Origin: Isurus oxyrinchus
Taxonomy: Eukaryota
Assembly (NCBI GenBank): GCA_026770705.1
Contig: JANJGN010000121.1
Coordinates: 682,001-746,000, forward strand
Direction: 5' to 3'
DNA: 64,000 nucleotides
Positions 6,535 to 63,443 of this stretch are shown here, piece by piece. The position numbers were made by a program, and so were the translations under genes. The notes under the pieces are model-generated. The model had not been told where the DNA came from and made no database searches. It saw only the letters and a list, made by a program, of their open reading frames with translations. Each line of letters starts with the position of its first letter. Position 1 is the first letter of the stretch.

Positions 6535-6783
6535 TCAGTTTCGCTTGAATCTGATCTGTGCGTATTCCGTCTCCTCTTCCCTGTGGACAGACGCATCACC
6601 ACTGGACACCCTGAAGACTTGGGGATTGGCGTAGAGAAGGTCGTTGGGATTGTCAGGGATTCCATGTCCAGCATCGCCTCCCACTGCACCTTCAGAGAGA
6701 CCCCAGGGAGCTGGGGTCTCCCCCTCACTAGTTGTTTCTCTGGTTGTTTTCCGGGGCTCAGTAATCAGCACGTTCTGTTTACC
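6535..6783 (-). CDS. Unit B distal terminal cytoplasmic exon: GKQNVLITEPRK...DLLYANPQVF...EEETEYAQIRFKRN*
   Basis: ccatttctctgtag|GGT acceptor, phase 0, 249-bp open frame, ITSM TEYAQI; minus-strand AATAAA at 5924-5929. Confidence 0.8.
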   Translation of the reverse strand, partial: GKQNVLITEPRKTTRETTSEGETPAPWGLSEGAVGGDAGHGIPDNPNDLLYANPQVFRVSSGDASVHREEETEYAQIRFKRN

Positions 6784-6924
6784 CTACAGAGAAATGGAAA
6801 CAGAAGACATCCTCACATCATTTACTGGCACTGATAGGGTTAAATTATTGTGCAGCCTCGTTAGTGTCAGTCATGTCTCAGTGGGTTTAAATTTCTCTCA
6901 TATCATATAAAAGTCACCACCTAT

Positions 6925-7125
6925 GGCAATGCAGCACTCCCTCAGTACTGACCCTCTGACAGTGCAGCACTCCCTCAGTACAGACCCTCTGACAGTGCAG
7001 CACTCCCTCAATACTGACCCTCCGACAGTGCAGCACTCCCTCAGTACTGACCCTCCGACAGTGCAGCACTCGCTCAGTACTGACCCTCAGACAGTGCAGC
7101 ACTCTCTCAGTACTGACCCTCTGTC
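6925..7125 (+). repeat. 33-bp satellite array (actgaccctccgacagtgcagcactccctcagt)
   Basis: ~6 tandem units visible. Confidence 0.9.
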
Positions 7126-7279
7126 AGTCTCGCAATCCCTCTGAAATGTCTCTGGCGAGTGCTGGCTTAGATTCTGCACTCAGGTGCCTGGTGTGAGGCT
7201 CAATAACATGAAACTTGTAATCAGAGACATGATGAGAAAGAGAGAGAGAGGGAGAAAGAGAGAGGAAGGATTATGAATC

Positions 7280-8148: not shown

Positions 8149-8230
8149 CTGGTGTTTCACAGAGAGTGGACTGGGGGTCAATGCAATGTCTCTGGTCCCT
8201 GAAACTCTCTCCTCCATCGCTGTCTTTCTC
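8149..8230 (-). CDS. Unit B distal juxtamembrane cytoplasmic exon (K)RKTAMEERVSGTRDIALTPSPLSVKHQ
   Basis: ttattgcag|G acceptor (phase 2, matches the TM exon), CAG|gtacag donor (phase 0, matches the terminal exon). Confidence 0.75.
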
Positions 8231-9427: not shown

Positions 9428-9676
9428 TCAGTTATGCTCGAACCTGATCTGTGCGTATTCCGTCTCCTCTTCCCTGTGGACAGACCCATCACCACTGGAA
9501 ACCCTCAAAACTTGGGGATTGGCATAGAGAAGCTCGGCGGGATTGTCGGCGTTCCCATGTCCAGCATCGCCTCCCACTGGACCTTCAGAGAGACCCCGGG
9601 GAGCTGGGGTCTCCCCCTCACTAGTTGTGTCTCTGGTTGTGTTCTGGGGCTCAGTAATCAGCACGTTCTGTTTACC
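9428..9676 (-). CDS. Unit B proximal terminal cytoplasmic exon: GKQNVLITEPQN...ELLYANPQVL...EEETEYAQIRFEHN*
   Basis: ctctgtag|GGT acceptor, 249-bp open frame, ITSM TEYAQI; minus-strand AATAAA at 8849-8854. Confidence 0.85.
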   Translation of the reverse strand, partial: GKQNVLITEPQNTTRDTTSEGETPAPRGLSEGPVGGDAGHGNADNPAELLYANPQVLRVSSGDGSVHREEETEYAQIRFEHN

Positions 9677-9819: not shown

Positions 9820-10185
9820 GACAGTGCAGCACTCCCTCAGTTCTGACCATCCGACAATGCAGCGCTCCCTCAGTCCTGATCCTCTGACAGTGCAGCACTC
9901 CCTCAGTACTGACCCTCCGACAGTGCAGCACTCCCTCAGTACTGACCCACCAACAGTGCAGCACTCCCTCAGTACTGACCCGCTTACAGTGCAGCACTCC
10001 CTCAGTCCTGACCCTCTGACAGTGCAGCACTCCCTCAGTACTGACCCTCCGACAGTGCAGCACTCCCTCAGTACTGACCCACCAACAGTGCAGCACTCCC
10101 TCTGTACTGATCCTCCGACAGTGCAGCACTTCCTCAGTACTGACCGTCCGACAATGCAGCAGTCCCTCAGTACTGACCCTCTGTC
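9820..10185 (+). repeat. 33-bp satellite array
   Basis: ~11 tandem units. Confidence 0.9.
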
Positions 10186-11236
10186 AGTCTCGCACTCCCT
10201 CGGTAATGGCTCTGGCGAGAGCTGGTTTGGATTCTGCACTCAAGTGTCTGATCTGAGGCTCATTAACATGAACCTTGTAATCAGAGAGAGAATGAGAGAG
10301 AGAGAGAGAGAGAAAGAAAGAGAGGTAGGGATAGAGAGAGAGACTGACATGATGCGATCAATGAATATCATGTTATTGGAAATTATTTTTATTAAAATAG
10401 AGGTTTATTCTGTGGGTGTGTCTGTGTGTGTATAAATTAGATTAAAGCCAGCCAGTCTGGGTACTTTGATGTATAGTAGTTTTGAGATGTAAACAGGGAG
10501 GCAAAGAGGTAATTTGCATTTTTAAACAGCGCATTCAGTGCCTGAGAGCGAAATCTTAAAACAATCAACATTTATATTACTAATAAAATTGATACTATGA
10601 AACGGGATTTATTGTTAGAAGAGATGGAGATCAAAGGTCCTGATGATACAATGAGAATTTACATTGAAAGAGAAGAGCTGGGTATAACTTGAGCAGTTTT
10701 GTGTGTGCAGAGCAGAGGCTTGTAACAGCAAAGCAGCTGTAAGCCTGCACCTGTCTGCAAAGGCACCAAAGTGAAAGGAACCTCATTTGGAATTTGTGAG
10801 GTGAAAATGCTTTGCCTGGTGTCTGCTTAAATTCTATGGGTTATCTTAGAGGAGATTAGTTTGGGAATTTGTTAAAAAGCCATGATAATACTAGCTTGTA
10901 GCCATGTGCATATGTTTAACTTGTGTTAATTAATAAATGGCTTATGTAGTTTGATATAAACCCATCTCGAGAACTGGTGGTCTTATTCCTGAATTTAAAG
11001 CTGCATCTCAAACATTCCACTGGGAAATATAGGTTATGACAGTTGTTTAAAGTTTCCCTCTGGGCTTTTAAACAACAGCCTTTACCAGTTGCTGTGTCAT
11101 AACAGAGAGACAGCATGATACTGAACCATTGCTGACTCCACAGGTACAAATCAGTGGGTAACAGGGCTGGGAATCTGGGACATGTGTTTACACACTGAGA
11201 TTGAAGCTTTGGAGTGAGTGTAAACAGCTCCTGTAC

Positions 11237-11318
11237 CTGGTGATTCACAGAGAGTGGACTGGGGGTCAATGCAATGTCACTGGTCCCTGAAACTCTCTCC
11301 TCCATCGCTGTCTTTCTC
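11237..11318 (-). CDS. Unit B proximal juxtamembrane cytoplasmic exon (K)RKTAMEERVSGTSDIALTPSPLSVNHQ
   Basis: gcag|G acceptor (phase 2), CAG|gtacag donor (phase 0), 82 bp. Confidence 0.8.
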
Positions 11319-12291: not shown

Positions 12292-12388
12292 TTTCTCACA
12301 CAGATGAAGATGAAGATTCCAGCCAGGAAAACACTCAACATGATCCCAGCCGTGAACAATCCTACTGTCCATTTACTGGAGTCTCTAC
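12292..12388 (-). CDS. Unit B transmembrane exon, uncharged: RDSSKWTVGLFTAGIMLSVFLAGIFIFICVRK
   Basis: gtttttacag acceptor, AGAAA|gtaagt donor, ~24-aa hydrophobic stretch followed by RK; not in the ORF track. Confidence 0.85.
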
Positions 12389-13940: not shown

Positions 13941-14047
13941 GTTTCACCAAAAGCTTTGTCAAAGAGATCGGTTTTAAGGAGCGTCCAAACTGAATGTTTC
14001 AACACAGCCCAAAAACCAGGACAGTGATCCAGAGTGATCCAGTGTGG

Positions 14048-14510
14048 NNNNNNNNNNNNNNNNNNNNNNNNNNNNNNNNNNNNNNNNNNNNNNNNNNNNN
14101 NNNNNNNNNNNNNNNNNNNNNNNNNNNNNNNNNNNNNNNNNNNNNNNNNNNNNNNNNNNNNNNNNNNNNNNNNNNNNNNNNNNNNNNNNNNNNNNNNNNN
14201 NNNNNNNNNNNNNNNNNNNNNNNNNNNNNNNNNNNNNNNNNNNNNNNNNNNNNNNNNNNNNNNNNNNNNNNNNNNNNNNNNNNNNNNNNNNNNNNNNNNN
14301 NNNTCTAGGTGTGTATGTGTGCGTGCGTCTGTGTNNNNNNNNNNNNNNNNNNNNNNNNNNNNNNNNNNNNNNNNNNNNNNNNNNNNNNNNNNNNNNNNNN
14401 NNNNNNNNNNNNNNNNNNNNNNNNNNNNNNNNNNNNNNNNNNNNNNNNNNNNNNNNNNNNNNNNNNNNNNNNNNNNNNNNNNNNNNNNNNNNNNNNNNNN
14501 NNNNNNNNNN
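14048..14510. other. Two assembly gaps (N 14048-14303 and 14335-14510) inside unit B
   Basis: Runs of n. Confidence 0.99.
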
Positions 14511-14677: not shown

Positions 14678-14974
14678 CTTGTACAGTTAGTACGAGGGTC
14701 CGCTCCGATGAAACAGATGGATATCTCACTCTGCAGCTGAGATTGTGTCCGTGGTGTTTGAGTGATGGGATCAGGGTCAGAACAGAAGTATAGGTCAGAG
14801 TGACACCATGCTGAGTTACAGTGTTTGAGACTGATCCAGGTACGTCAGTGGGAGTGTCCCAGGTTAAGACAGGTGCTGCTGTTCCATTGCACGTTGTGTT
14901 GAAGGTGCAGCTTACATCCACACGCTTTCCTGCAATAATTTCAGCAGGGAATATCGTGGGTTTATCTGTGAAAT
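14678..14974 (-). CDS. Unit B Ig C2-set exon (DFTDKPTIFP...SCTFNTTC...LTW...LSCRVRY...LTVQ)
   Basis: tgttag acceptor, CAAG|gtaagt donor, 297 bp phase 1/1; extra Cys as in Siglec domain 2. Confidence 0.92.
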
Positions 14975-15702: not shown

Positions 15703-16071
15703 CAGAAACGTGAAGCTGGGTTACAGGGTAATAGTTATGGCTCGGACCTTTGTCAAATTCTATTCTGAAAAAATAAGGTCCTGCATCTTCCCATCTGATG
15801 TTGTTTATAATCAGGGAACAGTCGCCATCTTTCAGGTCTCCAGACAGCCGGGTCCGATGGTGGAACCGTGGTAACTCGTGATTGTGAACCTTGGAGTGAA
15901 AGGCAATGGGAGCCCAGGGAATCTGTTTCTCATTATTAAACCAGACTCCAGCTCGCGGTCGGTTTTCCAAATGTGCTGGATAACTGTAATGACATGGAAT
16001 CTGTACACACGAACCTTCCTGCGCTGTCACCTCTCGTGGAGTGTCACCTTTCCACTCTTGTGACAGTCCAA
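15703..16071 (-). CDS. Unit B Siglec-type V-set exon V1 (GSCVQIPCHY...GDCSLII...GPYFFRIEF)
   Basis: ccccag acceptor, TCTG|gtaagt donor, 369 bp; Siglec Cys pattern and F-strand Arg (cf. CD33 SYFFRME). Confidence 0.92.
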
Positions 16072-16888: not shown

Positions 16889-17254
16889 CAGAAACATGAA
16901 GCTGGGTTTCAGGACGGTCGTTGTATCTATTCCTGCTGTCAAAATCTGTTCTGAATAAATAATATCCTGCATCTTCCCGTCTGATGTTGTTTATAATCAG
17001 GGAACAGTCACCATCTTTCAGGTCTCCAGAAAGCCGGGTCCGATGGTGGAACCATGGTAACTCGCGACTGTGATCCTTGGAGTGAAAGGCTATAGACCAT
17101 GTTTCCCAATTCCTTCTCATATACCAGATTCCAACAGGTGATCTCGGTACTAAATATGATGGGTAGCTGTAATGACACAGAATCTGTACACACGAACCTT
17201 CCTGCGCTGTTACCTCTCGTGGAGTGTCACCTTTCCACACTTGTGGTAGTCCAG
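16889..17254 (-). CDS. Unit B Siglec-type V-set exon V2 (GSCVQILCHY...WYMRRNWETWS...GYYLFRTDF)
   Basis: ccctag acceptor, TCTG|gtaagt donor, 366-bp open frame, Arg retained. Confidence 0.88.
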
Positions 17255-23249: not shown

Positions 23250-23289
23250 CTTGGAGAAGAGACAGGAGGAAATAGGATTTCCCGATCAT
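23250..23289 (-). CDS. Unit B signal-peptide exon coding part (MIGKSYFLLSLLQ); exon 23250-23331
   Basis: ATG at 23289, CAAG|gtaat donor; splices in frame to V2 or V1. Confidence 0.85.
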
Positions 23290-26273: not shown

Positions 26274-26413
26274 TTAAACAGTCTGTCGACTTCCTTTCAC
26301 TGTTTGTCTCTCCCAGACACAGACTCCAGCGATAGTGATAACCACAGCCACAAGGAATATCACAGCTCGTATTCCCAGGATCAGGATCACGTGCAGAATC
26401 TCTCCTCCACTGT
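26274..26413 (-). pseudogene. Unit C activating-type TM/short-tail exon (SGGEILHVILILGIRAVIFLVAVVITIAGVCVWERQTVKGSRQTV*); frame intact but upstream exons are broken
   Basis: Inverted copy of 46398-46537; acceptor is caag instead of ctag. Confidence 0.8.
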
Positions 26414-28088: not shown

Positions 28089-28240
28089 GTTCCACAGTGA
28101 TGGTTATGAACCCCTCCACTGCTCCATGTTCATTCTCTGCCACACACTGATAGTGTCCAGTGTCCCTGGATGTAACGTGAGGAATCACCAACCACAGCTC
28201 ATTGTTGGAACTTGTTCCGATCATTGGAACATTAAGATCT
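28089..28240 (-). pseudogene. Unit C 3' half of the second C2 exon; 5' half and acceptor replaced
   Basis: 'SSNNELWLVIPHVTSRDTGHYQCVAENEHG...TVE' matches only the 3' half of 44411-44692. Confidence 0.85.
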
Positions 28241-28564: not shown

Positions 28565-28861
28565 CTTGCACAGTTAGTACGAGGGTCCGCTCCGATGAAA
28601 CAGATGGATATCTCACTCTGCAGCTGAGAGTGTGTCCGTGGTGTTTGAGTGATGGGACCAGGGTCAGAACAGAAGTATAGGTCAGAGTGACACCATGCTG
28701 AGTTACAGTGTTTGAGACTGATCCAGGTACGTCAGTGGGAGTTTCCCAGGTTTAGACAGGTGCTGCTGTTCCATTGCACATTGTGTTGAAGGTGCAGCTT
28801 ACATCCACACGCTTTCCTGCAATAATTTCAGCAGGGAATATCATGGGTTTATCTGTGAAAT
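28565..28861 (-). pseudogene. Unit C first C2 exon with in-frame stop (TTA>TAA at 28752-28754)
   Basis: CCT GTC TAA ACC TGG versus CCT GTC TTA ACC TGG in the paralogs. Confidence 0.88.
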
Positions 28862-29720: not shown

Positions 29721-30096
29721 CAGAAACGTGAAGCTGGGTTACAGGATAATAGTTGTATCTATTCCTGTTGTCAAATTCTATTCTGAAAAAAATAAGGTCC
29801 TGCATCTTCCCGTCTGATGTTGTTTATAATCAGGGAACAGTCGCCATCTTTCAGGTCTCCAGACAGCCGGGTACGATGGCGGAATCTTTGATCCCTGTGA
29901 CTGTGACCCTCGGAATGAAAGGCTATAGACCATTTAGGCTGTGGGTTCCCATCTCTTCCTTTCAACCAGATTCCAACACGTGATCTCCCTACGAAATGTG
30001 ATGATTAACTGTAATGACATGGAATCTGTACACACGAACCTTCCTGCGCTGCCACCTCTCATGGAGTGTCGCCTTTCCACTCTTGTGACAGTCCAA
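29721..30096 (-). pseudogene. Unit C V-set pseudo-exon with TGA (30059-30061), TAA (30005-30007) and a +1 frameshift in the T-run before the essential Arg
   Basis: Manual translation against the five intact V exons. Confidence 0.9.
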
Positions 30097-31026: not shown

Positions 31027-31066
31027 CTTGGAAAAGTGACAAGAGGACGTAAGATTTCCCGATCAT
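31027..31066 (-). pseudogene. Unit C signal-peptide exon (MIGKSYVLLSLFQ); exon 31027-31106
   Basis: Homology to the other leader exons; splice sites intact. Confidence 0.8.
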
Positions 31067-38916: not shown

Positions 38917-38956
38917 ATGATCGGGAAATCTTACTTCCTCCTGTCACTTCTCCAAG
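38917..38956 (+). CDS. Unit D signal-peptide exon (MIGKSYFLLSLLQ); exon 38884-38956
   Basis: tctttcacag acceptor, CAAG|gtaat donor. Confidence 0.88.
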
Positions 38957-39906: not shown

Positions 39907-40275
39907 TTGGACTGTCACAAGAGTGGAAAGGTGACACTCCACGAGAGGTGACAGCGCAGGAAGGTTCGTGTGTAAAGATTCCATGTCATTACAGTTATCC
40001 ATCACATTTGGAAAGCCAACCACGAGTCGGAATCTGGTTTAATAACGAGAAACACAAATTCGACAATCCCTTTGCCTTTCACTCCAAGGATCACATTTAC
40101 GAGTTACCACGGTTCCACCATCGGACCCGGCGGTCTGGAGACCTGAAAGATGGCGACTGTTCCCTGATTATAAACAGCATCAGACGGGAAGATGCAGGAC
40201 CTTATTTTTTCAGGATAGAATTTGACAATGGTCCGAGCCATAACTATTACCATGTAACCCAGCTTCACGTTTCTG
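39907..40275 (+). CDS. Unit D Siglec-type V-set exon (...WFNNEKHKFDNPFAF...GPYFFRIEF...)
   Basis: ccccag/gtaagt boundaries, 369-bp open frame, essential Arg present. Confidence 0.92.
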
Positions 40276-41219: not shown

Positions 41220-41516
41220 ATTTCACAGATAAACCCACGATATTCCCTGCTGAAATTATTGCAGGAAAGCGTGTGGATGTAAGCTGCACCTTCAACACAA
41301 CGTGCAATGGAACAGCAGCACCTGTCTTAACCTGGGACACTCCCACTGACGTACCTGGATCAGTCTCAAACACTGTAACTCAGCATGGTGTCACTCTGAC
41401 CTATACTTCTGTTCTGACCCTGATCCCATCACTCAAACACCACGGACACACTCTCAGCTGCAGAGTGAGATATCCATCTGTTTCATCGAAGCGGACCCTC
41501 GTACTGACTGTGCTAT
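41220..41516 (+). CDS. Unit D first C2-set exon
   Basis: tgttag acceptor, T|gtaagt donor, 297-bp open frame. Confidence 0.92.
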
Positions 41517-44410: not shown

Positions 44411-44692
44411 ACGCACCACGGAATCTCTCAATTACTTATCTTGATATGATTAACGCTTCATCGATCAATATAATTGAGGGGAATTCTGCAGTGATAATCT
44501 GCTCTGTCGAGAGCTTCCCAGCTTCTAACCTGACGTGGCGCCATCTTAATGTCCCAATGAACAGAACAAGTTCCAACAATGAGCTGTGGTTGGTGATTCC
44601 TCACGTTACATCCAGGGATACTGGAGAATATCAGTGTGTGGCAGAGAATGAACATGGAGCAGTGGAGGGGTTCCTAACCATTACTGTGGAAT
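44411..44692 (+). CDS. Unit D second Ig exon (YAPRNL...IICSVESFPASNLTW...DTGEYQCVAENEHG...TVE)
   Basis: gtttttag acceptor, T|gtgagt donor, 282 bp; canonical C..W..YxC. Confidence 0.92.
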
Positions 44693-46397: not shown

Positions 46398-46537
46398 ACA
46401 GTGGAGGAGAGATTCTGCATGTGATCCTGATCCTGGGAATACGAGCTGTGATATTCCTTGTGGCTGTGGTTATCACTATCGCTGGAGTCTGTGTCTGGGA
46501 GAGACAAACAGTGAAAGGAAGTCGACAGTCTGTTTAA
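46398..46537 (+). CDS. Unit D terminal TM exon, activating type: (Y)SGGEILHVILILGIRAVIFLVAVVITIAGVCVWERQTVKGSRQSV*
   Basis: ttctgtgtgttctctag acceptor, phase 1; hydrophobic stretch with internal Arg; short Tyr-free tail; AATAAA at 47519-47524; spliced CDS of 1128 nt (375 aa) is open. Confidence 0.85.
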
Positions 46538-46564
46538 AGATTTGGACAGCAACAATCTCATCAT

Positions 46565-50046: not shown

Positions 50047-50086
50047 ATGATCGGGAAATCTTACTTCCTCCTGTCACTTCTCCAAG
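50047..50086 (+). CDS. Unit E signal-peptide exon (MIGKSYFLLSLLQ); exon 50005-50086
   Basis: Intact splice sites and ATG. Confidence 0.85.
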
Positions 50087-50948: not shown

Positions 50949-51317
50949 TTGGACTGTCACAAGAGTGGAAAGGTGACACTCCACGAGAGGTGACAGCGCA
51001 GGAAGGTTCGTGTGTACAGATTCCATGTCATTACAGTTATCCAGCACATTTGGAAAATCAACCACGAGGTGGAGTCTGGTTTAATAATGAGAAACAGATT
51101 CCCTGGGCTCCCATAGCCTTTCACTCCAAGGATCACAGTCGCGAGTTACCACGGTTCCGCCATCGGACCCGGCTGTCTGGAGACCTGAAAGATGGCGACT
51201 GTTCCCTGATTATAAACAACATCAGACGGGAAGATGCAGGACCTTATTTTTTCAGAATAGAATTTGACAATGGTCCGGGCCATAACTATTACCCTGTAAC
51301 CCAGCTTCATGTTTCTG
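50949..51317 (+). CDS. Unit E Siglec-type V-set exon (9 aa different from unit B V1)
   Basis: 369-bp open frame, canonical splice sites, YFFRIE. Confidence 0.9.
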
Positions 51318-52175: not shown

Positions 52176-52472
52176 ATTTCACAGATAAACCCACGATATT
52201 CCCTGCTGAAATTATTGCAGGAAAGCGTGTGGATGTAAGCTGCACCTTCAACACAACGTGCAATGGAACAGCAGCACCTGTCTTAACCTGGGACACTCCC
52301 ACTGACGTACCTGGATCAGTCTCAAACACTGTAACTCAGCATGGTGTCACTCTGTCCTATACTTCTGTTCTGACCCTGATCCCATCACTCAAACACCACG
52401 GACACACTCTCAGCTGCAGAGTGAGATATCCATCTGTTTCATCGGAGCGGACCCTCGTACTAACTGTGCAAG
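52176..52472 (+). CDS. Unit E first C2-set exon
   Basis: 297-bp open frame, gttag / G|gtaatt. Confidence 0.88.
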
Positions 52473-52796: not shown

Positions 52797-52948
52797 ACAT
52801 CTGAATGTCCAAATGAACAGAACAAGTTCCAACAATGAGCTGTGGTTGGTGATTCCTCACATTACCTCCAGGGACACTGGAGACTATCAGTGTGTGGCAG
52901 AGAATGAACATGGAGCAGTGGATGGGTTCATAACCATCACTGTGGAAC
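52797..52948 (+). pseudogene. Unit E truncated second C2 exon (3' half only)
   Basis: Same lesion as 28089-28240. Confidence 0.85.
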
Positions 52949-55397
52949 GTGAGTTACACAGACTTCAACATCTCTCTCAGATTCGAACACTACACAAACA
53001 CCATCGAACATACACACCTAAATAGACACGTGCAGACACACATATATGACCACACACAAAGACACACTCACACACAAACACTAACACTCACTCCCTCATG
53101 GGTTACCTGACCTCCCTCACTACTGCACTGGAGAGTTAGCCTGAATTCTGGGATTTGTGTTCCCATTCATATTTATGGAAGAATATGGAAATTACTATTA
53201 CAGACACTCAGATGCTTAGAGGCACTCATAGATACTCTCTGCTTCTCCAACTCTCTCTCTCCCTTTAAGAAGCTTCCTGAAACCTAACCCTTTGACGAAT
53301 CACCAACCCAACTCCTCCTTATCTGATTCTGTGTGATTTTCTTTGTGTATCTGAGAGTAAGAGAGAGTTGGAGAGGTTTAGGAAGAGAATTCCTGCTGGT
53401 GAAAAGCTTACATAATGTTCTCACTATTTCCGTGCACATAATTCCCAGTATGTCCAAAGCCCCTGTTTATAATGATGACTGCCTATGTAAACGTCACGCT
53501 GTAGTTACAGCCTCTCACCAGTGGTGGCATTGTAGCCCTTAATCCTTGTGTTTCCCAGCTTTCCCAGCAACTCTACTTCCCAGTTTGCTACACAAGCTGT
53601 GAGTTCTTCGGAATTCAATTGTTTCTCAAACGGTGGATTTGATGTCATTTTATTGAAAACTTCCTCAGTGCCTCCCTGAAGGGTTTACACTCTCTGGGAA
53701 GCAGGAATAGGCTGGATGTTGGGGAGTTCATCTTTTCCCAGAGAGTAGGGATCCTCGGGAATGTGCTGTCAGTGGGTGTGGTGGTTGCTGTCTCTCTGTC
53801 ACCTTCAAGAGGGATCTGGAGTGGTTACTGACTGGGGGAGAGATCATGGAAACGGAGAATGGTACAGCACAGGAGGAGGCCATTCAGCCCATTGAGCCTG
53901 TGCCAGGTCTTTCAATGTTCTATCCCATCAGATCCACTAACCACCACTACACTTTGCCCCCATCTTCCTCCTTCAAGTGTTTATCCAATTTCCCTTTTGA
54001 AAGTTCTTATTGGATCTGCTTCCACCGCCCTTTCAGGCAGCACCTTCCAGATCACAACAACTCGCTCTGTCAAAACAAATTCCCCATCCAGTTCGTCAAT
54101 CTGTGTCCCTCTGGTTACCGACCCTCATGCCCCTTAAATACATCGATACTGTTCACCTCAACCACTCCCTGTGGGAGCGAGTTCCACATTCTCCCCTCTC
54201 TCTGGGTAAAGATTGGAACTGTTTAGTAAGCGGGGGGTGTAAGTCCGTGGGGGAGTCCATCTCAATCCTGCCCGATTGAGCCAGTGAGCCAGTGTACAAA
54301 CTCACACCAAGTCCCATTCACCCATCACCCCTGTGCTTACTGATACACACTGACCTCCTGTCTGACAGCAGAATTGGAGGAGAGCAGAGATCTCAGAGGT
54401 TTTTAGGGTTGGAGGAGGTTACAGTGATAGAGAGTGTAGAGGGGGGATGGTGTGGTAAGAAATCAATGATGAGAATTTGAAATTTGAGTCATTGCTGGAC
54501 TGAGAGTTAGTGTAGGTCAGCCAGTGACAGGGCAGCGATCGGCTGAATAGAAAATCAGGGATAAAAACTGGGGGATGAAGTCTATCCTGATGTGAGGTCT
54601 CCGATAGCAATGACCTGAAATTTGTGTCCTTTGCTGCCTTTATTCAAAATTGCCCATGAAGACAACACAGCAGCTCCTAGAATAGACAGGCTGTTCAGTG
54701 TCACACTTCCTGTCCATTCTCACCATGCTAGATACTTCAATAAGGGAGCAAGATAACTGACAGAGACAAGGGAGGCAAAGCTGTCTGTGTGTAGAACTGT
54801 CAAATATTCTGAGTTATCATGATTGTCTCTGACCTGCTGCAGAGTTCAAATTTCACAGAACATTAGCACTTTGCAGCTCAGAGAGAGACCATTGACTCAC
54901 TGTCTGAAAGGGCGGTGGAAGCAGATTCAACAGGAACTTTCAGAAGGGGAACTGGATAAATACTTGAAGGTGACATTTTGCAGGGCTGTGGAGGAGAGAG
55001 CAGAGGTGAGAGTGGGACTAATTGGACAGATCTTTCAAAGGCCCAGCACAGGCTCGATGGGCCAAATGGCTTCCTTTTGTTCCCGATCATTCTACAATCT
55101 GATAAATTAAGACCCACATCAATAACTCTTAAGGCTCCAGCTGCAGGGATGGATCTTTGAGAAGGACAGGGAACAAGAGGTTTCTGGTATCATTTTCAAT
55201 TTTATTGACAATTACATAACAGTATAGATTTGTTGAATATTTGAGTGTCTAAAGAGTAGAGGTAATCTGCACTTACGCCCAGATCTTGTGTTGGTAACCT
55301 TGTCTGGAGGTGTCTTTAAATGCTCACAGTGATCTGTGGGATTGTCATTCTTGGATGTTGTCCCTGGTTTCAATTGGCATTTTACCCTTGATGCAAT

Positions 55398-58200
55398 TGG
55401 GGAGGCTTTAAACTAACATGGCAGGGGATGGGATCCAGAGAGGAGGTTCAGCAGAGGGAGATGCACAGCCAAAATTAGAAGAGAGAGCAAGTGAACCTGG
55501 AAGGCAGAGAAATTATTGGCCAGTTAAGGCACAAGATAGCGTGGCAAAGTTGGATTATATTTACTTTAATGCAAGGAGTCTGACGAATAAAGCAGATGAG
55601 TTGAGGGCACAAATAACACATGGATGTATGATGTCATTGCTATCACAGACATGGATTAGAGAGGGGCAGGATTGGCCGCTCAATATTACAGGATACAGGG
55701 TCTTCTGGCAAGACAGGGAAGGAGGTAAAAGAGGAGGGGGTATTGCAAGATTGATCAAGGAATCAGTTATTGCAGTGAGGAGGGAAGACACCTTAGGGGG
55801 CTCCTCAAATGAAGCCATATGGGTAGAACCTAAAAACAAATAAGGAACAATCAGCTTGCTGGGAGTGTTCTACAGGCCCAATGACACTCAGAGAAATAGA
55901 AGTGCAGATACAAAGGCAAAATTCAGAGAAGTATAAAAATAATCGGGTTGTAATGGTGGGGCTTTTCACCTTCCCCAACAATAACTGGGTTAGTCATAGT
56001 GTGATAGTTTTAGAGGGGGCAGAATTGTTAAAATGCATCCAGGAGAGATTTTTAAGCCAGTACATAGAAAATCCTACAAGAGAGGGGTCGGTCCTGGAGT
56101 AAATTTTAAGGAATGTAACCAGGCAAGTTGTAGACGTATCAGTGGGGGAGCATTGTGCAGATAGTGATCATCATTCCATTAGATTCTAGGTTGTTATGGA
56201 AAAGAACAAGGATGGGCCAGAAATCTGAGTTCTCAATTGGTGGAAGGCTGATTTTAATAAGATCAAATATGATTTGGCCAGAGTGGAACTGGGAGCAGCT
56301 ACCTTTAGGGAAATCTGCGTCAGAGCAATGGGACTCATTCAGGAAGGAAGTGGGGAGAGTACAGGGCCAACATATTCCAGTAAAGGCAAAGGGTGGGACC
56401 AACAAATCCAGGGAATCCTGGATGTCGAGAGATTTACAGGATTGGATAAAGAGAAAAAGGGAGGCTTATGGCAGATACCAAAGGCTCAAAACAGTGGAAG
56501 CCTTAGAAGAGTATAGAATGTGTAGGGGGGACCTTAAAAAGAAAATTAGTAGAGCAAAAAGGGGCCATGAAGAAACATTAGCAGGAAAAATGAAGGAAAA
56601 TCCAAAGTTATTTTACAAGTACATTAAGAGTAAGAGGATAACTAGGGAAAGAGTAAGGCCCATTAAGGACCATATTGGTAGTTTGTGTGTGGAACCGGAA
56701 GATGTAGGTAGGGTTCTAAATGAACACTTTGTGTCAGTGTTCACAAGTGAGAGGGGCAATGTGGGTTTGGAAATCAGGCAGAAGGACTGTGATATAGTTA
56801 AAGAAATTAGAATAGAAAGGAACGAGGTTCTAAGTTGTCTGGCAGTCTCAAACGTAGATATATCTGCAGGCCCGGATGAAATGTATCTCAGGCTGTTGAG
56901 TGAGGCAAAGGAGGAGATAGCAGGGGTGCTGGCAATAATTTTCAATACATCTCTGGCCAGAGGAGAGGTACCAGAGGACTGGAGGACAGCCAATGTGGTA
57001 GCGTTATTCAAGAAGGGAGGAAGGGATAAACCAGGGAACAACAGGTCAGTCAGTCTAACCTCAGTGGTGGGGAAACTATTGAAAGCAATTCTGAGGGACA
57101 GAATTAATCTACACTTGGAGAGGCAGGGATTAATCAAGGACAGTCAGCATGGTTTTGTTAAAGGGAGGTCATGTCTGACCAGTTTGATTGAATTTTTTGA
57201 AGAGGTGACCAATTGTGTAGATGAGGGCAATGAATTTGACATAGTCAACTTGGACATCAGCAAGGCTTTTGATAAGGTCCAGCATGGGAGACTGTAAACG
57301 AAAGTAAGAGCACATGGGATCCAAGGGAATTTGGCAAATTGGATCCAGAATTGGCTGAGTGCCAGGAAGTAGAGGGTGATGGTCGACGGGTGTTTTTGTG
57401 ACTGGATGCCTGTGTCCAGTGGGGTTCCACAGGGATCGGTGTTGGGTCCCTTGCTGTTTGTGGTATATATAAACGGTCTAAACTTGAATGTAGGAAGGTT
57501 GATCAGTGACTTCGCGGATGATATGGAAATTGATGGGGTGGTAAATAATGAAGAGGATAGCCTTAGATTACAGGGGGATATAGACGGGCTGGTCAGATGG
57601 GCTGATCAGTGCCAAATGGAATTTAACCTGGATAAGTGTGAGGTGATGCACTTGGGCAGGATAAACAAGGCACAGGAATAGACAATGAATGGTAGGACCC
57701 TGGAAAGTAACAAGGATCAGAGGGACCTTGGTGTGCATGTCCACCGTTCCCTTAAAGTAGTGGGACAGGTGGATAAGGTGGTTAAGAAGGCATATGGAAT
57801 ACTTGCCTTTATTAGCCGAGAGATAGAATATAAGAGCAGGGAGGTTATGCTGGAACTGTATAGAACACTGGTTAGGCCACAGCTAGAATATTGCGTGCAG
57901 TTCTGGAACCCACATTATAGGAAGGATGTGATTGCCCTAGAGAGGGTGCAGAGGAGATTTACCAGGATGTTGCATAGATTGAATCTGGAACTCACTGCCT
58001 GAAAGGGTGGGAGAGGCAGAAACCCTCATAACATTTAAGAAGTATTTGGATGTGCACTTGTGATGCCATCGCATACAAGGCTTTGGGCCCAGTGCATTAA
58101 TGGGATTAGAATAATTAGGTACTTGTTTGACCGACGCAGATTCGATGGGCCAAAGGGCCTTTTACTGTGCTGTGGACCCCTGTGAATCTATGACTCTATG
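55398..58200 (+). mobile_element. Near full-length decayed CR1 ORF2 (APE endonuclease + RT) with 3' tail
   Basis: 'YFNARSL', 'YRVFWQDREGGKRGGGIA', 'SQHGFVKGRSCLT', 'SGVPQGSVLGPLLF', 'FADD'; multiple stops and frameshifts. Confidence 0.95.
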
Positions 58201-59149
58201 GGCTGAATTTCCTGCCTGTCGGGGGGGTGGGTCTGAATATTTAAATGGGGCAGGATGATGTCGGGGGTTCCTCCTGATGTCATCCCGCATCATCATAGTG
58301 TCGCTGAGCAGGCCCTGCCCCCTGCTCGCCAACGGGAAAATTCAGCCCGATGACTCCATGCAACAGGACTGTACGGTGATTGAGGAGCGGGAATGGATCT
58401 GATTTCTCCTTGGTTAGGCCTCACCGCTGATCCTTTGTGTGTAATAACTCCATAGGACCCTGGTTCTGAACAGAAACCTTGGAGATGAAGTTCCGTCCTT
58501 TCACTGAGGATACCCTCCATTGTGTTGTGTGGCACTACCACCATGCTGGATGAGCAGGTTATTGTTGAGTCAATGCCTCTTAATGTCCATTACACCTTTG
58601 TCACTTTGCTTATGATGAAGAGTAAATTAATAAGGTGGTGATTGGCCAGGTTGGAATTGTCCCGCTGGATTGGACATATCCCTGGGCAGTTTTTCACATT
58701 GCAGGTTCAGCAGGCCCTCCCTTCGATGCGCTGTAAAGGACATTGTCCAAGAGCAGGCACAGTGGAGTGCTGAGAGTCACAGTCAAAATGTTGTAGGTGA
58801 TCTCAAATCCTTGTAAGCACTCGGCCAGCCAACAGCCTGAGATGGACACACATGTGGACAGTACTGACACCTGCCAATGGGCCCCTCATTTTCTTACCTT
58901 GACAGGCTGTCCCCACTATTTCCCACTGCCAAGTTGTCGAAGAATATCGGATCACAAAGATTCCAGTATGATGCCCTGCCTGCCTTTAAAAATGACTCCC
59001 CGGGAGATGCCTTGCTCATCCCAATAAGGTCAAGTTGAATCAGGAGATCCTTCAATGATGCTTCCTCAGTATATGTAGTGTAGAAGCTTTCACCGTTCCC
59101 TCTTGCAGCTGCTGGCATTTGTGTTGTGCTAAATGGACTAGATCAATTG

Positions 59150-62100
59150 ACAGACTTGCATTGTCCAGCAGGTGTAATGTTGGAGCTCCTTTGAAACTGC
59201 CAATATTGTTGAAACTTTCTGCATATTTCAATGTTATGTCATGAATTGAGGTGATGGGGTAGTATGTGAAACTGGGACAAACATAAATCCATTGGCTTTT
59301 GGCCAGACTGGATAATCCTGGCAGTGGGTGGGGCCAGAAAATCCCACCCCTATGGGACATTTTCAGTTTATTTGATGTGCTGAGAGAGATCATTAAGGAC
59401 AACAATCCACAATTTATTGGCAAGCCACGTCAGGATATGTGTGAGAGGTGGAATATCGATCACCGCTCCTCGTCTCACCGTGCACATCATCGCCATTTCC
59501 TGGTTTGTCTGTCACCACATGTATATGTTCCTGATGGGATAGGGGATGGTCATTCTTATTGCTTGAAGGTTCCCCGTTGTGCAGGGTTTGATTGGATCAG
59601 CGCACGGCTCTTTGTAGCTGCATCAGCCTTTGCTCTCGTGCCCTGCCGCTGTCAATGGCCCTTTCTGCCACAAGCCTTGCAGGATTGGTGGAAAGCTGAG
59701 CATTTCCTTGGTGCCTGCAGAAGGCCACACCTTCCACACGTCTCACTAGGTTTGGATGTTCTAGTGAGTGTGTCAACAATTGATGTTGTACTGAGGACCT
59801 GTAAGCTTCGTTGACCTGCGAGGATTACTTCGTATTTATGTCCATCCTTGAGTAGCTCTTCAATGCTATAGGTTTTGGACTTATCTAGCAGATCTTTCTG
59901 GAAGGCTTCCATGGGAGTGGATGCGATCACCAACTCAACAACTCTGTCTGCAGGCTCTGTGTTTGAAATCACAGTGCGTACCCTTTTCTCTACATTGGCT
60001 GACAAAGTGGTCTATGGATTGTGTAGGCTGATGAAATGACATAAACTCTAGTTGATGAATATGGAGTTTCACCTGATTCTGAACCTGTCTTCCAATATCG
60101 TCCATATCTATTGGGGATCCTTTCACTCTTCTGCTGTTAATCCTGACGTGTTCAGCCTGTGTAGACCTTCATTCCCAATCACGAGGTGAATTTTTATGGG
60201 TGGCTCGTCTGGTTCAGTCACACCTGAATCAGGAAACCAGAGCTCTGTACGCTGTTTAAACATTCTGAATTCAGATAGTCGGTCAGCTACATCCCAGTTC
60301 AAACTGGGGAATTTCGTGGACATTCTGACAATATTCCTTTGACCTGCCTTCTCCTACAGGACCTGGGATGAGTGTCGCTTTAGCCCCTTTTGTGTGCTTT
60401 TCCGAAGCTCCGCCCACGAAGACGGGTTGTGGCAGGAACACACCACGGAGTAATGGAGTCTTTGTTTTTTATTCAATTTGCTGTTCAGCAATCTCGAAGC
60501 CGCCCGTTATAATCACTAACTTCTCTGGGCTGATTTTTATAATGGTTTTTGTGTGTTTGACTCTCCCTCGCTCACTATCGATCCAGCCCACACCCTGGTC
60601 ACTCGCCTTCCCTGACTGAGCTAACCCGCTGCTGGTCCTGGCGATACACACTGTCCCACTCACTGACCTACAGGCCGTGTGCTGTAATCTCACCACGAGG
60701 GATCCGTCTGCTCCCCAGCTCTTTACTTGAGCTCTTTCCCGTCACTGTGTCTTCAAAGGTTTCCTGAGCAGTCAGTACACTGCGATTTCAACCCTCTCTG
60801 ATGCTGTGTCTCTGTTGTGGTCTGACCAAAGTGTCGAGGGTCGTCTCATGTCATGTAGCTCGATCTCAGGCTGTTCACCACGTCATACCTGTACTGAATC
60901 TTGCTGCCAGAATGTTTGGCCACCGCTGATCACCATGTTGTGTTTTTATAATGATATAAAGGCACCAGCCCCTGATACGGAATTGGGTAAATACATTGTG
61001 GGTTCAGTTATTTAGAACAGGGACATGAGAACAGATATACAAGGATAGAAAGCTGGGAGACACCTGCAGCCAAACTGTGTGAGCTGTGTTCTGCTCACAG
61101 ACCAAAGTGAAACTTGGACTGGATGGTGTTATCATCCCAGCTGATGTTACTACTGGGCAAGTCAGATCCCAGGGTGGAACTCAGCTTGATAGGTCCTAAC
61201 TTTTATTTTTTATTTAGGAATGTGGAGTGAGGCTACTGAACAGAGTCACAGGAGTCATCTGATGAACTTCTAACAAAAGAATAAAACATTTATTAAACTA
61301 GGAAAGACAAATTATCTTACATTACTCCTTCACTCAGACCTATACCTTTGCAGATTCATAAGTAGAACACAAGTTACAATAGCTATCTTATACTCTCATG
61401 TTCACACTAAGTACACAGTCGATGTAAACCAATAGACGACCTGTGGTCAGGGACACCACATTCTGAAAGAAACTGACAGAACCCACTTGGAACAAATGCT
61501 ATGTCTCCCTCCTCATCTGACCCCAGACGCTTGTTACACTGTGAGCCAACCAGTCTCACTGAAAAGCTTCTTTCATATGAGGGTTTCCAATCTCCACTCT
61601 CCAAGAACTCACTTTGGAATCTTCTCCAACATGACACTTTCACTCAGACACCTTCCACAAGGCTCCACTTTCACTATTTCAAACTCTCCTTCCCATGTTC
61701 CTGTCCCCTGGATCGCCACGTGCATTCAGCCTTCCTTCCACGCCCTGTCTCTCCAATGCTCAGCCGTGTCAATGGAACACCATGGCTTCACATGGCCGTA
61801 GTAATGAGTCACCAACCTGTGGTGTCTCCTAGGATCTTCTGGCTTCTCACAAGCCTATTTTGCTTTAGGCCTGTGTCCTGCTGCTTTCTCCCTTTATGCT
61901 TGAAGCCTTCTTCTGCTCCTCACTCTTAACTTCACTTAACAGGGCCTTTTCCAGATTTGACTAGAAGGTTTTCTTGGGCCCTTTCTCCTGTTCCACTCGA
62001 TAGTTTTGGCTTCATCTTTACTTTGGGACTGACTATCTGTCCCAATCCTTTGCTGCGTCTCCTGGCAACTCCTTTCAACAGAACTGAAAGTACTTTTCTG

Positions 62101-62850
62101 TTTTTCTCGGTCTCTGTGTGTCCCTCCCTCTGGATCACTGTTGCTAGGCAACAGCACAGTTTCTTCTAACTTGTGTTTGTTTTGACTTCCCTTCAAGAGT
62201 TATAAAAACTCATTAGATAGGCGGCTTCTTCCAAAGTGAAACCAAAACTCAAGTTCCCCCTTTTCAAAACACCCAAATACAGAAATACAAACTAAACTTG
62301 AACTGAAAGATAGACCTTATGCCTAACGCACACAAATACACAGAGAACTTCCTTAAGCCAACCCCAGTTCTGAAAAATCACATGACGCACTTCCCCTCGA
62401 GTGATGTCATGCTGCTGTCCCTGAAAGGCATATTACAACAGTGTTATCACTTGGCAGGTGATGTGTGCCAGGCAGACCAAGTCCCTGAGAGAAAGGTGGT
62501 CACACGATCATAATGAATTTGCAATTTGTATTTATTATGAGATGTGTGCACTGAATTCAGAAGCAATAAGTCCACCAAGATCTTTAGAGATTTAAAAAAA
62601 TAAATTAAAATATTTGTCACAAAAATAAAAGATTTTAAGCACATACATAAGACTACAATGACAGCTATAATAACTCCAAAAATTCCTAATTAATCTGACT
62701 CCCAGTTACACTCCCTTTAAGGCAACAGACCAAAAATAGATTTTAGATTTAAAACAAACCCAGCAAGTTAACACAATGCCCTGGACAATGGAATTCCAAA
62801 TGGATTTTCCCCAACTTCAGTTCTGTTGGATAGCAGGCTTGTGCACAAAC
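59150..62850 (-). mobile_element. Gypsy-like gag remnant plus LTR-like elements; inverted paralog of 18160-21857
   Basis: Mirror ORFs, e.g. 60123-60323 versus 20686-20901. Confidence 0.65.
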
Positions 62851-63065
62851 AGGGTCCTGAGGACCATCAGCCAATGTAGAATGAACTTGTCCACTCCTGT
62901 TTCCAGGATTCTCTCCCATCCATTGTGATACCTTGGGGAGTTCCATGTGTGTCCTGTAGATGGTCCACACTGCAGCCACTGTGCCCCAGTGAAGGAGGGG
63001 GTGGATATCGAGTCTAGTGGATCGTCAAAACACACAGAGTTAAATATTAATATTTCTCTCCCCAG

Positions 63066-63443
63066 TTGGACTGTCACAAGAGTGGAAAGGCAACACTCCA
63101 CGAGAGGTGACAGCGCAGGAAGGTTCGTGTGTACAGATTCCATGTCATTACAGTTACTCATCACATTTGGTAAAGAAAACACATGTCGGAATCTGGTATA
63201 TGAGGAGGTACATACAGAACAAATGGTCTAAATGGTCTATAGCCTTTCACGCCAAGCATCACAATCGCGGGTTACCACGGTTCCACCATCGGACCCGGCT
63301 GTCTGGAGACGTGAAAGATGGCAACTGTTCCCTGATTATAAACAACATCAGACAGGAAGATGCAGGACCTTATTTTTTCAGGATAGAATTTGACATTGCT
63401 CCGAGCCATAACTATTACCCTGAAACCCAGCTTCACGTTTCTG
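63066..63443 (+). CDS. Unit F Siglec-type V-set exon (...WYMRRYIQNKWSKWS...GPYFFRIEF...), GC donor, no leader exon of its own
   Basis: cccag acceptor, 378-bp open frame, TCTG|gcaagt donor. Confidence 0.8.

What the first reader, a model, noticed from the sequence alone, without database searches (positions are those of the whole stretch)
6535..63443. Paired activating/inhibitory Siglec-like receptor cluster in a probable cartilaginous fish
Seen: near-identical leader and C2 exons and closely related V exons are joined to two different back ends. Unit B has an uncharged TM plus a ~110-aa tail with LLYANP and TEYAQI. Units D and C have an Arg-containing TM plus a ~12-aa Tyr-free tail. B-V1 and E-V differ at only 9 of ~123 aa, and E is an activating-type unit by its 3' flank. 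All five intact V exons keep the Siglec Cys pattern and the F-strand Arg. Established: paired Siglecs such as human Siglec-5/14 and Siglec-11/16 have this same logic. Inference: this is an independent or very ancient paired-Siglec system; I cannot confirm whether it has been described in this lineage.
Basis: partly seen in the sequence, partly recalled or inferred. Interest (0 to 1): 0.88.

Follow-up and report, generated by a model that had tools for sequence, protein, structure and literature searches.

The report
Shark paired Siglec-type receptor gene cluster
This shark DNA holds a cluster of duplicated Siglec-type immune receptor genes whose near-identical sugar-sensing ends join either an "activating" membrane anchor or a long signalling tail. 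Only one gene of each kind looks usable here, and the tail's main "hold back" motif is imperfect.

Summary
The window carries six units (A-F) of an elasmobranch Siglec-type family, made by tandem and inverted duplication.

- **Unit D** is a complete 375-aa gene: leader, V, C2-1, C2-2, then an Arg-containing TM with a 12-aa Tyr-free tail.
- **Unit B** reads in frame as leader, V1, V2, C2-1, [assembly gap], uncharged TM, then a 111-aa tail with LLYANP and TEYAQI.
- **Unit C** keeps the Arg-TM exon, but its Ig exons are dead.
- **Unit E** lost its Arg-TM exon in a 3.6-kb deletion that fuses it to unit F.

The V exons are Siglec-type by sequence (PDB hits E about 1e-16) and by predicted fold, and all five intact copies keep the Cys triad and the YFFR arginine. 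Between B and D/E the exons are 94-99% identical, against about 80% in mid-intron, which fits gene conversion.

Two caveats apply. LLYANP fails the ITIM consensus because of Pro at Y+3. Sialic-acid binding and the adaptor for the Arg-TM are untested.

NCBI's automatic annotation already names shark relatives "Siglec" or "CD33-like", but I found no paper describing the family. This scan had already flagged the same family on other DNA of this genome.

The parts
2533..2572 (-). Unit A leader exon (MIGKSYFLLSLLQ). The rest of the unit runs off the window start.
   Evidence: its downstream intron is B-type
23250..23289 (-). Unit B leader exon
16889..17254 (-). Unit B first V exon (V1, YYLFR), phase 1, AG/GT
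15703..16071 (-). It differs from E-V at 9 of 122 aa.
14678..14974 (-). Unit B C2-1 exon (C-x5-C), 98-99% nt identical to those of D and E
14048..14510 (.). Two assembly gaps with a 31-nt island between them, in B's intron after C2-1, where a C2-2 exon would lie. The edge at 14511-14556 is a unit of the 33-bp minisatellite. The gap was not filled.
12292..12388 (-). Unit B uncharged TM exon (WTVGLFTAGIMLSVFLAGIFIFICV)
11237..11318 (-). Unit B cytoplasmic exon a
9428..9676 (-). Unit B terminal exon a (LLYANP, TEYAQI, stop)
8149..8230 (-). Tandem duplicate cytoplasmic exon b (intact, with splice sites)
6535..6783 (-). Tandem duplicate terminal exon b (LLYANP, TEYAQI, stop)
31027..31066 (-). Unit C leader exon (MIGKSYVLLSLFQ)
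29721..30096 (-). Unit C V pseudo-exon: two stop codons and a 1-nt insertion at the YFFR arginine
28565..28861 (-). Unit C C2-1 pseudo-exon (in-frame TAA)
28089..28236 (-). Unit C remnant of the C2-2 exon (the 5' half is replaced)
26274..26413 (-). Unit C Arg-TM exon with short tail and stop (intact)
38917..38956 (+). Unit D leader exon
39907..40275 (+). Unit D V exon. The predicted fold (pLDDT 88.8) has only Siglecs as its 47 nearest PDB neighbours.
41220..41516 (+). Unit D C2-1 exon
44411..44692 (+). Unit D C2-2 exon
46398..46537 (+). Unit D Arg-TM exon (HVILILGIRAVIFLVAVVITIAGVCVW), 12-aa tail ERQTVKGSRQSV, stop
50047..50086 (+). Unit E leader exon
50949..51317 (+). Unit E V exon
52176..52472 (+). 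Unit E C2-1 exon. Its last 31 nt match, bar the final 2 nt, the loose end of a contig in run X3 that continues into an Arg-TM exon.
52798..52948 (+). Unit E remnant of the C2-2 exon (same lesion as in C)
54272..54277 (+). Deletion junction. Relative to the C-to-B module, 3.6 kb is missing, and that stretch held the Arg-TM exon and the next unit's leader.
63066..63443 (+). Unit F V exon (V1 type, YFFR kept, GC donor). The unit runs off the window end.

Best explanation
The window is a piece of a lineage-specific elasmobranch cluster of Siglec-type receptor genes. It was built by tandem and inverted segmental duplication.

Shown by sequence:
- A shared front end (leader, one or two Siglec-type V domains, C2 domains) is joined to one of two back ends.
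- One back end is a TM helix with a buried Arg and a 12-aa tail. It is intact in unit D, sits behind dead Ig exons in C, and is deleted in E.
- The other is an uncharged TM with a 111-aa tail bearing two tyrosine motifs (unit B).
- Front-end exons of B and D/E are kept near-identical by exon-centred gene conversion.

Inferred mechanism:
- The V domain binds a sialylated ligand through the conserved F-strand Arg.
- D signals by pairing its TM Arg with an acidic-TM, ITAM-bearing adaptor chain.
- B signals through its phosphorylated tail tyrosines.
- B and D would then read similar ligands with different outcomes, as in Siglec-5/14.
- In this lineage B's proximal motif (LLYANP) is not a canonical ITIM. 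Its output may therefore be weaker than, or different from, classical SHP-mediated inhibition.
For: **Gene models**
- D is a complete 375-aa ORF with GT-AG introns.
- B is in frame at 499 aa, all introns GT-AG.

**Siglec identity**
- Pfam finds V-set and Ig_CD22.
- PDB phmmer gives Siglec-5, -7, -8, CD33, MAG, Siglec-10 and sialoadhesin at E 8e-16 to 7e-13, with YFFR and all three Cys aligned.
- C21, C26 and C84 are invariant and R102 is at least 90% conserved in a 25-sequence alignment.
- The AlphaFold model has pLDDT 88.8, and PDB ranks 1-47 are all Siglecs at TM 0.80-0.88.
- C2-1 aligns with MAG domain 2, including the C-x5-C. C2-2 is best matched by MAG domains 3 and 4.

**Back ends**
- Arg-TM with short tail.
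- Tyr tail.
- The same two cassettes occur in Gnomon models of other sharks. Scyliorhinus torazame XP_072326180 has the Arg-TM. Carcharodon XP_041037177 has the same TM and the LLYANP...TEYAQI tail at 88.5% identity.

**Homogenisation**
- V exons are 94-96.5% and C2-1 exons 98-99% identical, with no indels.
- Mid-intron identity is 78-82%, with 17-53 indel events.
- Exon dS is 0.013-0.08.

**Splicing**
- A contig of run X3 joins the 3' end of an E/C-type C2-1 exon directly to the start of an Arg-TM exon.
Against: - LLYANP fails the ITIM consensus [I/V/L/S]xYxx[L/V] given in PMC7226832 and PMC13358205, in both tail copies and in Carcharodon. Relatives have LLYINV, LLYANI or LLYASI.
- Only one of the three Arg-TM-type units is intact.
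- No junction specific to D (C2-2 to TM) or to B appeared in the contigs laid. The runs are only guessed to be RNA, and the family is multi-copy, so the junction seen cannot be assigned to a unit.
- A 2014 survey found no FcR gamma homologue in shark genomes (PMC4016189), so the adaptor is unknown.
- B's architecture across the assembly gap is unknown.
- Ligand binding is untested.
- V-exon dN/dS is about 0.6-1.5, which is also compatible with relaxed constraint.
Confidence: 0.75

Rival explanations
1. This is a decaying multigene array rather than a working pair. Recent segmental duplication alone explains the similar front ends. B's tail is no longer inhibitory because its ITIM is degenerate; the YANP sequence would suit Grb2-type pY-x-N binding instead. 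The 'paired' look is then a by-product of duplication.
For: - C is a pseudogene, E is truncated and fused, and F has a GC donor.
- LLYANP has Pro at Y+3.
- V-exon dN/dS is near 1.
- The duplication structure is dominated by large inverted and tandem copies at 88-94% identity.
Against: - Exons are 2-10 times less diverged at synonymous sites than the intron between them. Plain duplication does not give that pattern.
- D and B are full-length with clean splice sites.
- Both cassettes are kept in several shark orders.
- LLYANP...TEYAQI is conserved in Carcharodon.
Confidence: 0.15
2. The receptors are Siglec-fold proteins that do not bind sialic acid. They would recognise another ligand, as some mammalian Siglecs and Siglec-like proteins do after losing or repurposing the site.
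For: - No binding data exist.
- The V domains evolve fast.
- B stacks two V domains, an architecture not known in characterised Siglecs.
Against: - The F-strand Arg is kept in all five intact V exons and in at least 90% of aligned relatives.
- The fold is nearest to sialoside-bound Siglec structures.
Confidence: 0.07
3. Part of the structure is an assembly artefact: mis-joined or collapsed paralogues in a repeat-rich region.
For: - Assembly gaps lie inside unit B, and the gap edge is a minisatellite.
- 33-bp arrays flank many units.
- Very high k-mer depth over the C2-2 exon in run X14, a large run of unstated type, shows that many copies exist genome-wide.
Against: - The copies differ by 6-17%, with indels and private lesions. 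That is too much for alleles or collapsed copies.
- Unit D is contiguous, with no gap.
- The deletion junction has clean flanks with short microhomology.
Confidence: 0.03

Closest known systems
Human paired receptors Siglec-5 (inhibitory) and Siglec-14 (activating, Arg in TM, DAP12), and Siglec-11/16
   Same: - They are linked genes.
- Their N-terminal Ig domains are near-identical and kept so by gene conversion.
- One partner has a long Tyr-motif tail. The other has a charged TM residue and a short tail (PMC6288428, PMC13358205).
   Different: - The shark system arose independently; its V domains form an elasmobranch-only clade.
- B has two V domains.
- The proximal motif in B is not a canonical ITIM.
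- The adaptor is unknown.
Human SIGLEC14/5 fusion (SIGLEC14-null) allele
   Same: A deletion between adjacent paired genes removes the activating back end and joins one front end to the neighbouring gene. The 54272-54277 junction does the same to E and F. The human case is recalled from my own knowledge, not checked in a paper.
   Different: - Here the deletion also removes the neighbour's leader.
- E's C2-2 exon is already broken.
- Whether a fused transcript is made is unknown.
Carcharodon carcharias 'myeloid cell surface antigen CD33-like' XP_041037177 (Gnomon model)
   Same: - It is 88.5% identical to B from V2 to the C-terminus.
- It has the same TM and the same LLYANP...TEYAQI tail.
- It is 93% identical to E's leader, V and C2-1.
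   Different: It has a single V and no C2-2 (C2-1 is spliced straight to the TM). It is an automatic prediction with no published study.
Tetrapod CD33-related Siglecs (CD33, Siglec-5, -7, -8, -10)
   Same: - The V-set has the same Cys triad and YFFR Arg.
- The C2-1 domain has the inter-domain Cys.
- The distal tail motif TEYAQI resembles TEYSEI/V.
   Different: - They form a separate, well-supported clade, and the deep branching order is unresolved.
- The shark C2 domains score as well or better against MAG.
Myelin-associated glycoprotein (Siglec-4)
   Same: It is the best PDB match for both C2 exons and a top fold match for V.
   Different: MAG is a conserved single-copy 5-Ig adhesion protein. 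It has no Arg-TM partner and no clustered expansion.

Membership tests
Siglec family (I-type lectins) | N-terminal V-set Ig domain of Siglec type | tested here: met
   - Pfam V-set plus Ig_CD22.
- PDB phmmer top 17 hits are all Siglecs, E 8e-16 to 7e-13.
- Foldseek ranks 1-47 are all Siglecs, TM 0.80-0.88.
Siglec family (I-type lectins) | Conserved F-strand arginine that pairs with the sialic-acid carboxylate | tested here: met
   - YFFR (YLFR in B-V1) is present in all five intact V exons.
- It aligns on YFFR of Siglec-5.
- R102 is at least 90% conserved.
- It is lost only in pseudo-exon C.
Siglec family (I-type lectins) | Three-Cys V pattern (B-E intrasheet pair plus a Cys for the V-to-C2 bond) and C-x5-C in C2-1 | tested here: met
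   - C21, C26 and C84 are invariant.
- SCTFNTTC aligns on MAG SCMVPDNC.
- The bonds themselves are not shown.
Siglec family (I-type lectins) | Binding of sialylated glycans | not testable with these tools
   This needs recombinant V-C2-Fc protein and glycan arrays with an Arg-to-Ala control.
CD33-related Siglec subfamily | Groups with tetrapod CD33-related Siglecs in phylogeny | tested here: inconclusive
   - In the V-domain tree the elasmobranch clade has 44 rows (SH-aLRT 95).
- The tetrapod clade has 40 rows (SH-aLRT 99) and is separate.
- The nodes joining them are unresolved.
CD33-related Siglec subfamily | Membrane-proximal ITIM [I/V/L/S]xYxx[L/V] plus a distal ITIM-like/ITSM motif | tested here: not met
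   - The proximal LLYANP has Pro at Y+3 in both tail copies.
- The distal TEYAQI fits TxYxx[I/V].
- Relatives in other sharks do have LLYINV, LLYANI or LLYASI.
Paired activating/inhibitory receptors | Closely linked genes with highly similar ligand-binding domains | tested here: met
   - B and D lie within 30 kb of each other.
- V exons are 94% (B-V2 vs D) to 96.5% (B-V2 vs E) nt identical.
- C2-1 exons are 98-99% identical.
Paired activating/inhibitory receptors | Activating partner with a basic TM residue and a short tail lacking motifs | tested here: met
   D has HVILILGIRAVIF... followed by ERQTVKGSRQSV and a stop, with no Tyr.
Paired activating/inhibitory receptors | Association of the activating partner with an ITAM adaptor, and recruitment of phosphatases by the other partner | not testable with these tools
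   No adaptor gene lies in the window. FcR gamma was reported absent from sharks in 2014 (PMC4016189).
Paired activating/inhibitory receptors | Concerted evolution of the extracellular exons by gene conversion | tested here: met
   - Exon dS is 0.013-0.08.
- Mid-intron divergence is about 0.2, with many indels.
- The pattern is shown; the process is inferred.

The most novel reading that the evidence does not exclude
Elasmobranchs evolved their own large Siglec-type receptor family. The family independently reinvented the whole paired-receptor toolkit:
- Arg-TM and Tyr-tail cassettes swapped behind shared V/C2 exons;
- exon-centred gene conversion;
- SIGLEC14/5-like deletion fusions.

It also adds stacked V-V lectin heads, and it would signal through an adaptor other than FcR gamma. 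If so, a contest between sialic-acid sensing and pathogen mimicry was already shaping immune receptors in early jawed vertebrates.
Probability: 0.35. Interest if true: 0.75.

Novelty: new variant of a known kind. Interest (0 to 1): 0.6.

Why it matters
Published work on fish Siglecs states that fish have only Siglec-1, CD22, MAG and Siglec-15, and that they lack CD33-related inhibitory Siglecs (PMC7226832). Paired Siglecs are described as a mammalian, mostly primate, phenomenon.

A clustered, rapidly turning-over Siglec-type family in sharks, with both activating-type and Tyr-tail forms, would matter in three ways:
- It would either move fast-evolving immune Siglecs to the base of jawed vertebrates or show a striking convergence.
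- It offers natural experiments in one 64-kb stretch: V-V heads, a degenerate ITIM, a deletion fusion and pseudogenes.
- It raises a concrete open question: which adaptor serves Arg-TM receptors in sharks.

The claim rests on sequence and automatic gene models. Nothing about ligand or signalling has been measured.

Tried and rejected
- **Leader search.** A hydrophobicity and donor scan for leader exons missed them. They were found only after shark homologues gave the MIGKSYF motif.
- **Reads.**
  - The one read-laying run showed no joint from D's C2-2 (44692) to its TM (46398), and no B junction was tested.
  - All runs were Logan contigs, only guessed to be RNA, with intron coverage as well. 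They show that spliced family members exist. They do not show which unit is expressed.
  - Depth over the C2-2 exon is just as high in run X14, a large run of unstated type, so it reflects copy number and not expression.
- **Literature.** Seven searches found no paper on shark or ray Siglec expansions or paired Siglecs. One look-up by id (PMC3015071) was not held.
- **A TM exon for E.** Only two Arg-TM exons exist in the window, and neither belongs to E.
- **CD33-related or MAG.** Subfamily assignment could not be settled. The V domain is about equidistant from CD33-related Siglecs, MAG and sialoadhesin, and the C2 exons lean towards MAG.
- **Joined models.** They were assembled only inside scripts from window coordinates and compared locally with proteins already fetched. 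Every database search was made exon by exon, by reference. A search with the joined protein was left out.
- **Assembly gap.** It was not filled or looked up.

Full report
**Sequence and gaps.** The window is 64,000 bases with two runs of N, at 14048-14303 and 14335-14510. Self-comparison shows a patchwork of tandem and inverted duplications at 83-97% identity, and many arrays of a 33-bp minisatellite.

**Exons found.**
- Six-frame scans and tblastn with shark homologues located all exon types.
- There are five leader exons encoding MIGKSYFLLSLLQ, each ending in a phase-1 GT donor: 2533-2572(-), 23250-23289(-), 31027-31066(-), 38917-38956(+) and 50047-50086(+).
- There are six V exons, five of them intact.
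- There are four C2-1 exons. Only one C2-2 exon is intact (44411-44692); the other two are remnants.
- There are two Arg-TM exons and one uncharged TM exon.
- The exon pair encoding the Tyr-motif tail is present twice in tandem.

**Gene models.**
- **Unit D (+)** assembles into a complete 375-aa ORF with canonical splice sites. Its exons are leader 38917-38956, V 39907-40275, C2-1 41220-41516, C2-2 44411-44692 and TM plus tail 46398-46537. The C-terminus reads ...HVILILGIRAVIFLVAVVITIAGVCVWERQTVKGSRQSV, followed by the stop codon.
- **Unit B (-)** runs leader 23289-23250, V1 17254-16889, V2 16071-15703, C2-1 14974-14678, TM 12388-12292, cytoplasmic exon 11318-11237 and terminal exon 9676-9428. 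All introns are GT-AG. It is in frame at 499 aa, with a 111-aa tail holding LLYANP and TEYAQI. A second intact copy of the last two exons follows at 8230-8149 and 6783-6535.
- **Unit C (-)** has an intact leader and an intact Arg-TM exon (26413-26274). Its V exon has two stop codons and a 1-nt insertion at the YFFR arginine. Its C2-1 exon has a TAA, and the 5' half of its C2-2 exon is replaced. C is a pseudogene.
- **Unit E (+)** has an intact leader, V and C2-1, the same C2-2 lesion as C, and no TM exon.
- The joined models were built only inside scripts from window coordinates. Database searches were made exon by exon, by reference.

**The assembly gap.**
- The Ns lie in B's intron after C2-1, and no visible exon is cut.
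- The flank at 14511-14677 matches the post-C2-1 intron of D. The bases next to the gap (14511-14556) are a unit of the 33-bp minisatellite that also precedes D's C2-2 exon.
- Beyond the gap, 12389-14047 has only short repeat matches elsewhere in the window. The shared front end therefore gives way to B's own back end at or inside the gap.
- A C2-2 exon may be hidden there. Because all Ig exons are phase 1, B is in frame with or without it.
- The Carcharodon model closest to B splices C2-1 directly to the TM.

**Is it a Siglec?**
- Pfam gives V-set and the CD22-like first-Ig family for all five V exons.
- Against PDB sequences the 17 best matches are all Siglecs: Siglec-5, -7 and -8, CD33, MAG, Siglec-10 and sialoadhesin, at E 8e-16 to 7e-13. 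The printed alignment puts QEGSCVQIPC on QEGLCVLVPC, GDCSL on KNCSL and YFFRIE on YFFRVE of Siglec-5.
- In an alignment of 25 V domains from sharks, rays, other fishes and tetrapods, the three Cys are invariant and the Arg is at least 90% conserved.
- An AlphaFold model of D's V domain (pLDDT 88.8) has only Siglecs as PDB neighbours down to rank 47 (TM 0.80-0.88). The first non-Siglec is a sodium-channel beta-2 subunit.
- C2-1 aligns with MAG domain 2, including both Cys of the C-x5-C, and then with CD33. C2-2 is best matched by MAG domains 3 and 4.
- Family membership is met on every sequence criterion. Sugar binding is untested.

**Whose genes?**
- A profile-free search of 1.8 billion proteins gave 1,455 hits.
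- The closest are Gnomon predictions from sharks and rays. [quoted passage not shown] The species are Cetorhinus, Mustelus, Scyliorhinus, Carcharodon, Hypanus, Hemitrygon, Pristis, Chiloscyllium and Narcine.
- Carcharodon XP_041037177 is 88.5% identical to B from V2 to the end, with the same LLYANP...TEYAQI tail, and 93% identical to E's front.
- The source is therefore an elasmobranch. The species is not determined.
- In a V-domain tree, all shark and ray sequences plus the window's five V domains form one clade (SH-aLRT 95). Tetrapod CD33-related-like proteins (Tupaia CD33, Xenopus, turtle, gecko) form another (SH-aLRT 99). The order of the deep branches is unresolved.
- The pairing is thus independent of the primate pairs. 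Whether the family is "CD33-related" cannot be decided here.

**Paired-receptor signature.**
- B-V2 and E-V differ at 13 of 369 nt and 9 of 122 aa. B-V2 against D-V, and D-V against E-V, are 94% identical over aligned positions.
- The C2-1 exons differ at 3-6 of 297 nt.
- The intron between V and C2-1 is only 78-82% identical in its middle, with 17-53 indel events.
- Synonymous divergence in the exons is 0.013-0.08, several-fold below intron divergence. Selection on protein sequence cannot explain that, but short gene-conversion tracts centred on the exons can.
- V-exon dN/dS is 0.6-1.5.
- The same Arg-TM cassette (VILILGIRA...) and ITIM/TEYAxI tails occur in other sharks' models.

**Large-scale structure.**
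- On the minus strand the order is C (Arg-TM type), then B (Tyr tail), then A.
- On the plus strand E-to-F is an inverted copy of C-to-B. 50351-54275 matches 30694-26746 at 93%. The match then jumps to 23169-21858 and on to B's intron 1 and V1.
- The 3.6 kb missing at 54272-54277 held the Arg-TM exon and the next leader. E was thus an Arg-TM unit that lost its back end and is now fused upstream of F. I found this before reading the scan's own note on it.
- A LINE fragment with a reverse-transcriptase match is inserted in F's intron.
- According to notes on the adjoining window, which I did not test, F continues to a second V exon and an Arg-TM exon beyond 64000.

**Transcript evidence.**
- Only Logan contigs of coded runs were available, and their kind is a guess.
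- Laid on 44300-46600, one contig of run X3 carries 29 letters before position 46396. These letters are identical to the last bases of the C2-1 exons of E (52442-52470) and C (28567-28595), and they run straight into the Arg-TM exon. This is a C2-1-to-TM(Arg) splice that skips C2-2.
- A contig of run X1 joins a C2-2 3' end to a C2-2 start, as in paralogues with tandem C2-2 domains.
- These contigs show that spliced family members link Ig exons to the Arg-TM exon. They do not identify the unit.
- No D-specific joint was seen, and B was not tested.

**Caveats on function.**
- LLYANP does not fit the ITIM consensus [I/V/L/S]xYxx[L/V] (PMC7226832, PMC13358205). It contains pY-x-N, which from my own knowledge is the Grb2 SH2 preference.
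- TEYAQI fits TxYxx[I/V].
- A 2014 survey found no FcR gamma in shark genomes (PMC4016189), so the partner of the TM Arg is open. CD3 zeta, DAP12-like or other chains are possible.

**Literature.** Teleosts are said to have only Siglec-1, CD22, MAG and Siglec-15, and to lack CD33-related Siglecs (PMC7226832). I found no paper on shark Siglec expansions or pairs. The whale shark genome paper only lists Siglecs among the gene families enriched in the jawed-vertebrate common ancestor. The scan itself had already flagged and followed up this family about 308 kb upstream in the same genome, and on other pieces of it.

Noticed in passing
window 6930-7128, 9820-10205, 24523-24925, 31489-31792, 37499-38105, 43970-44278, 47883-48385, 48599-49237; also 14511-14556: A 33-bp minisatellite (6-19 copies per array, in both orientations) sits between exons and between units. 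One array lies directly upstream of D's C2-2 exon, and one unit sits at the edge of the assembly gap. It may drive unequal exchange and explain the gap.
   Followed up: partly
window 33869-33985 (-): An orphan terminal exon encodes ...DDLYANCDFAKDSVYGNL followed by a stop. It is a third tail type, seen in other shark family members (for example P0014, P0040 and P0007). It lies between the divergent leaders of C and D, with no matching TM exon nearby.
   Followed up: partly
window 3023-3103(-), 23740-23820(-), 38395-38472(+), 49504-49596(+); relic at 31877-31942(-): About 450-530 bp upstream of every leader exon lies a copy of the third tail type's cytoplasmic exon (STGRGHSAQAERVGSSSPGEQSDRSW). 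Four of the five copies have an AG acceptor and a GTAAGT donor. It could be a relic of the duplication unit or a co-opted 5' exon. A polypyrimidine-AG acceptor-like site lies roughly 30-45 nt upstream of each leader ATG.
   Followed up: partly
window 38895 (+), 23311 (-), 31088 (-): An out-of-frame upstream ATG lies 22 nt before the leader ATG in units D, B and C, but not in A or E. Its reading (MKYL...) matches the N-terminus of the Carcharodon CD33-like isoform X2 model.
   Followed up: no
window 55585-59147, ORF 56155-57297 (+): There is a 3.6-kb insertion in F's first intron relative to B's. It carries a reverse-transcriptase (RVT_1) fragment and is likely a LINE.
   Followed up: partly
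window 63443-63445 (+): F's V exon ends in a GC donor (TG|GCAAGT), not GT. Such donors are rare but can be functional.
   Followed up: no
window 15703-16071 (-): B's second V domain reads HYSYPAHLEN. It lacks the extra Cys (PSCL) that second V domains carry in other sharks' models (P0002, P0004, P0005). It looks like a single-V-type exon, closest to E-V. So B may use V1 and V2 alternatively, or V2 may have been converted recently.
   Followed up: partly
window 31930-32541: A 44-bp minisatellite of about 14 copies has overwritten half of the upstream exon copy next to unit C.
   Followed up: no
window 44377-44684: K-mer depth over the C2-2 exon is hundreds to thousands of times that of its flanks in all four runs laid, including the large run X14 of unstated type. 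This exon must be present in very many copies genome-wide.
   Followed up: no
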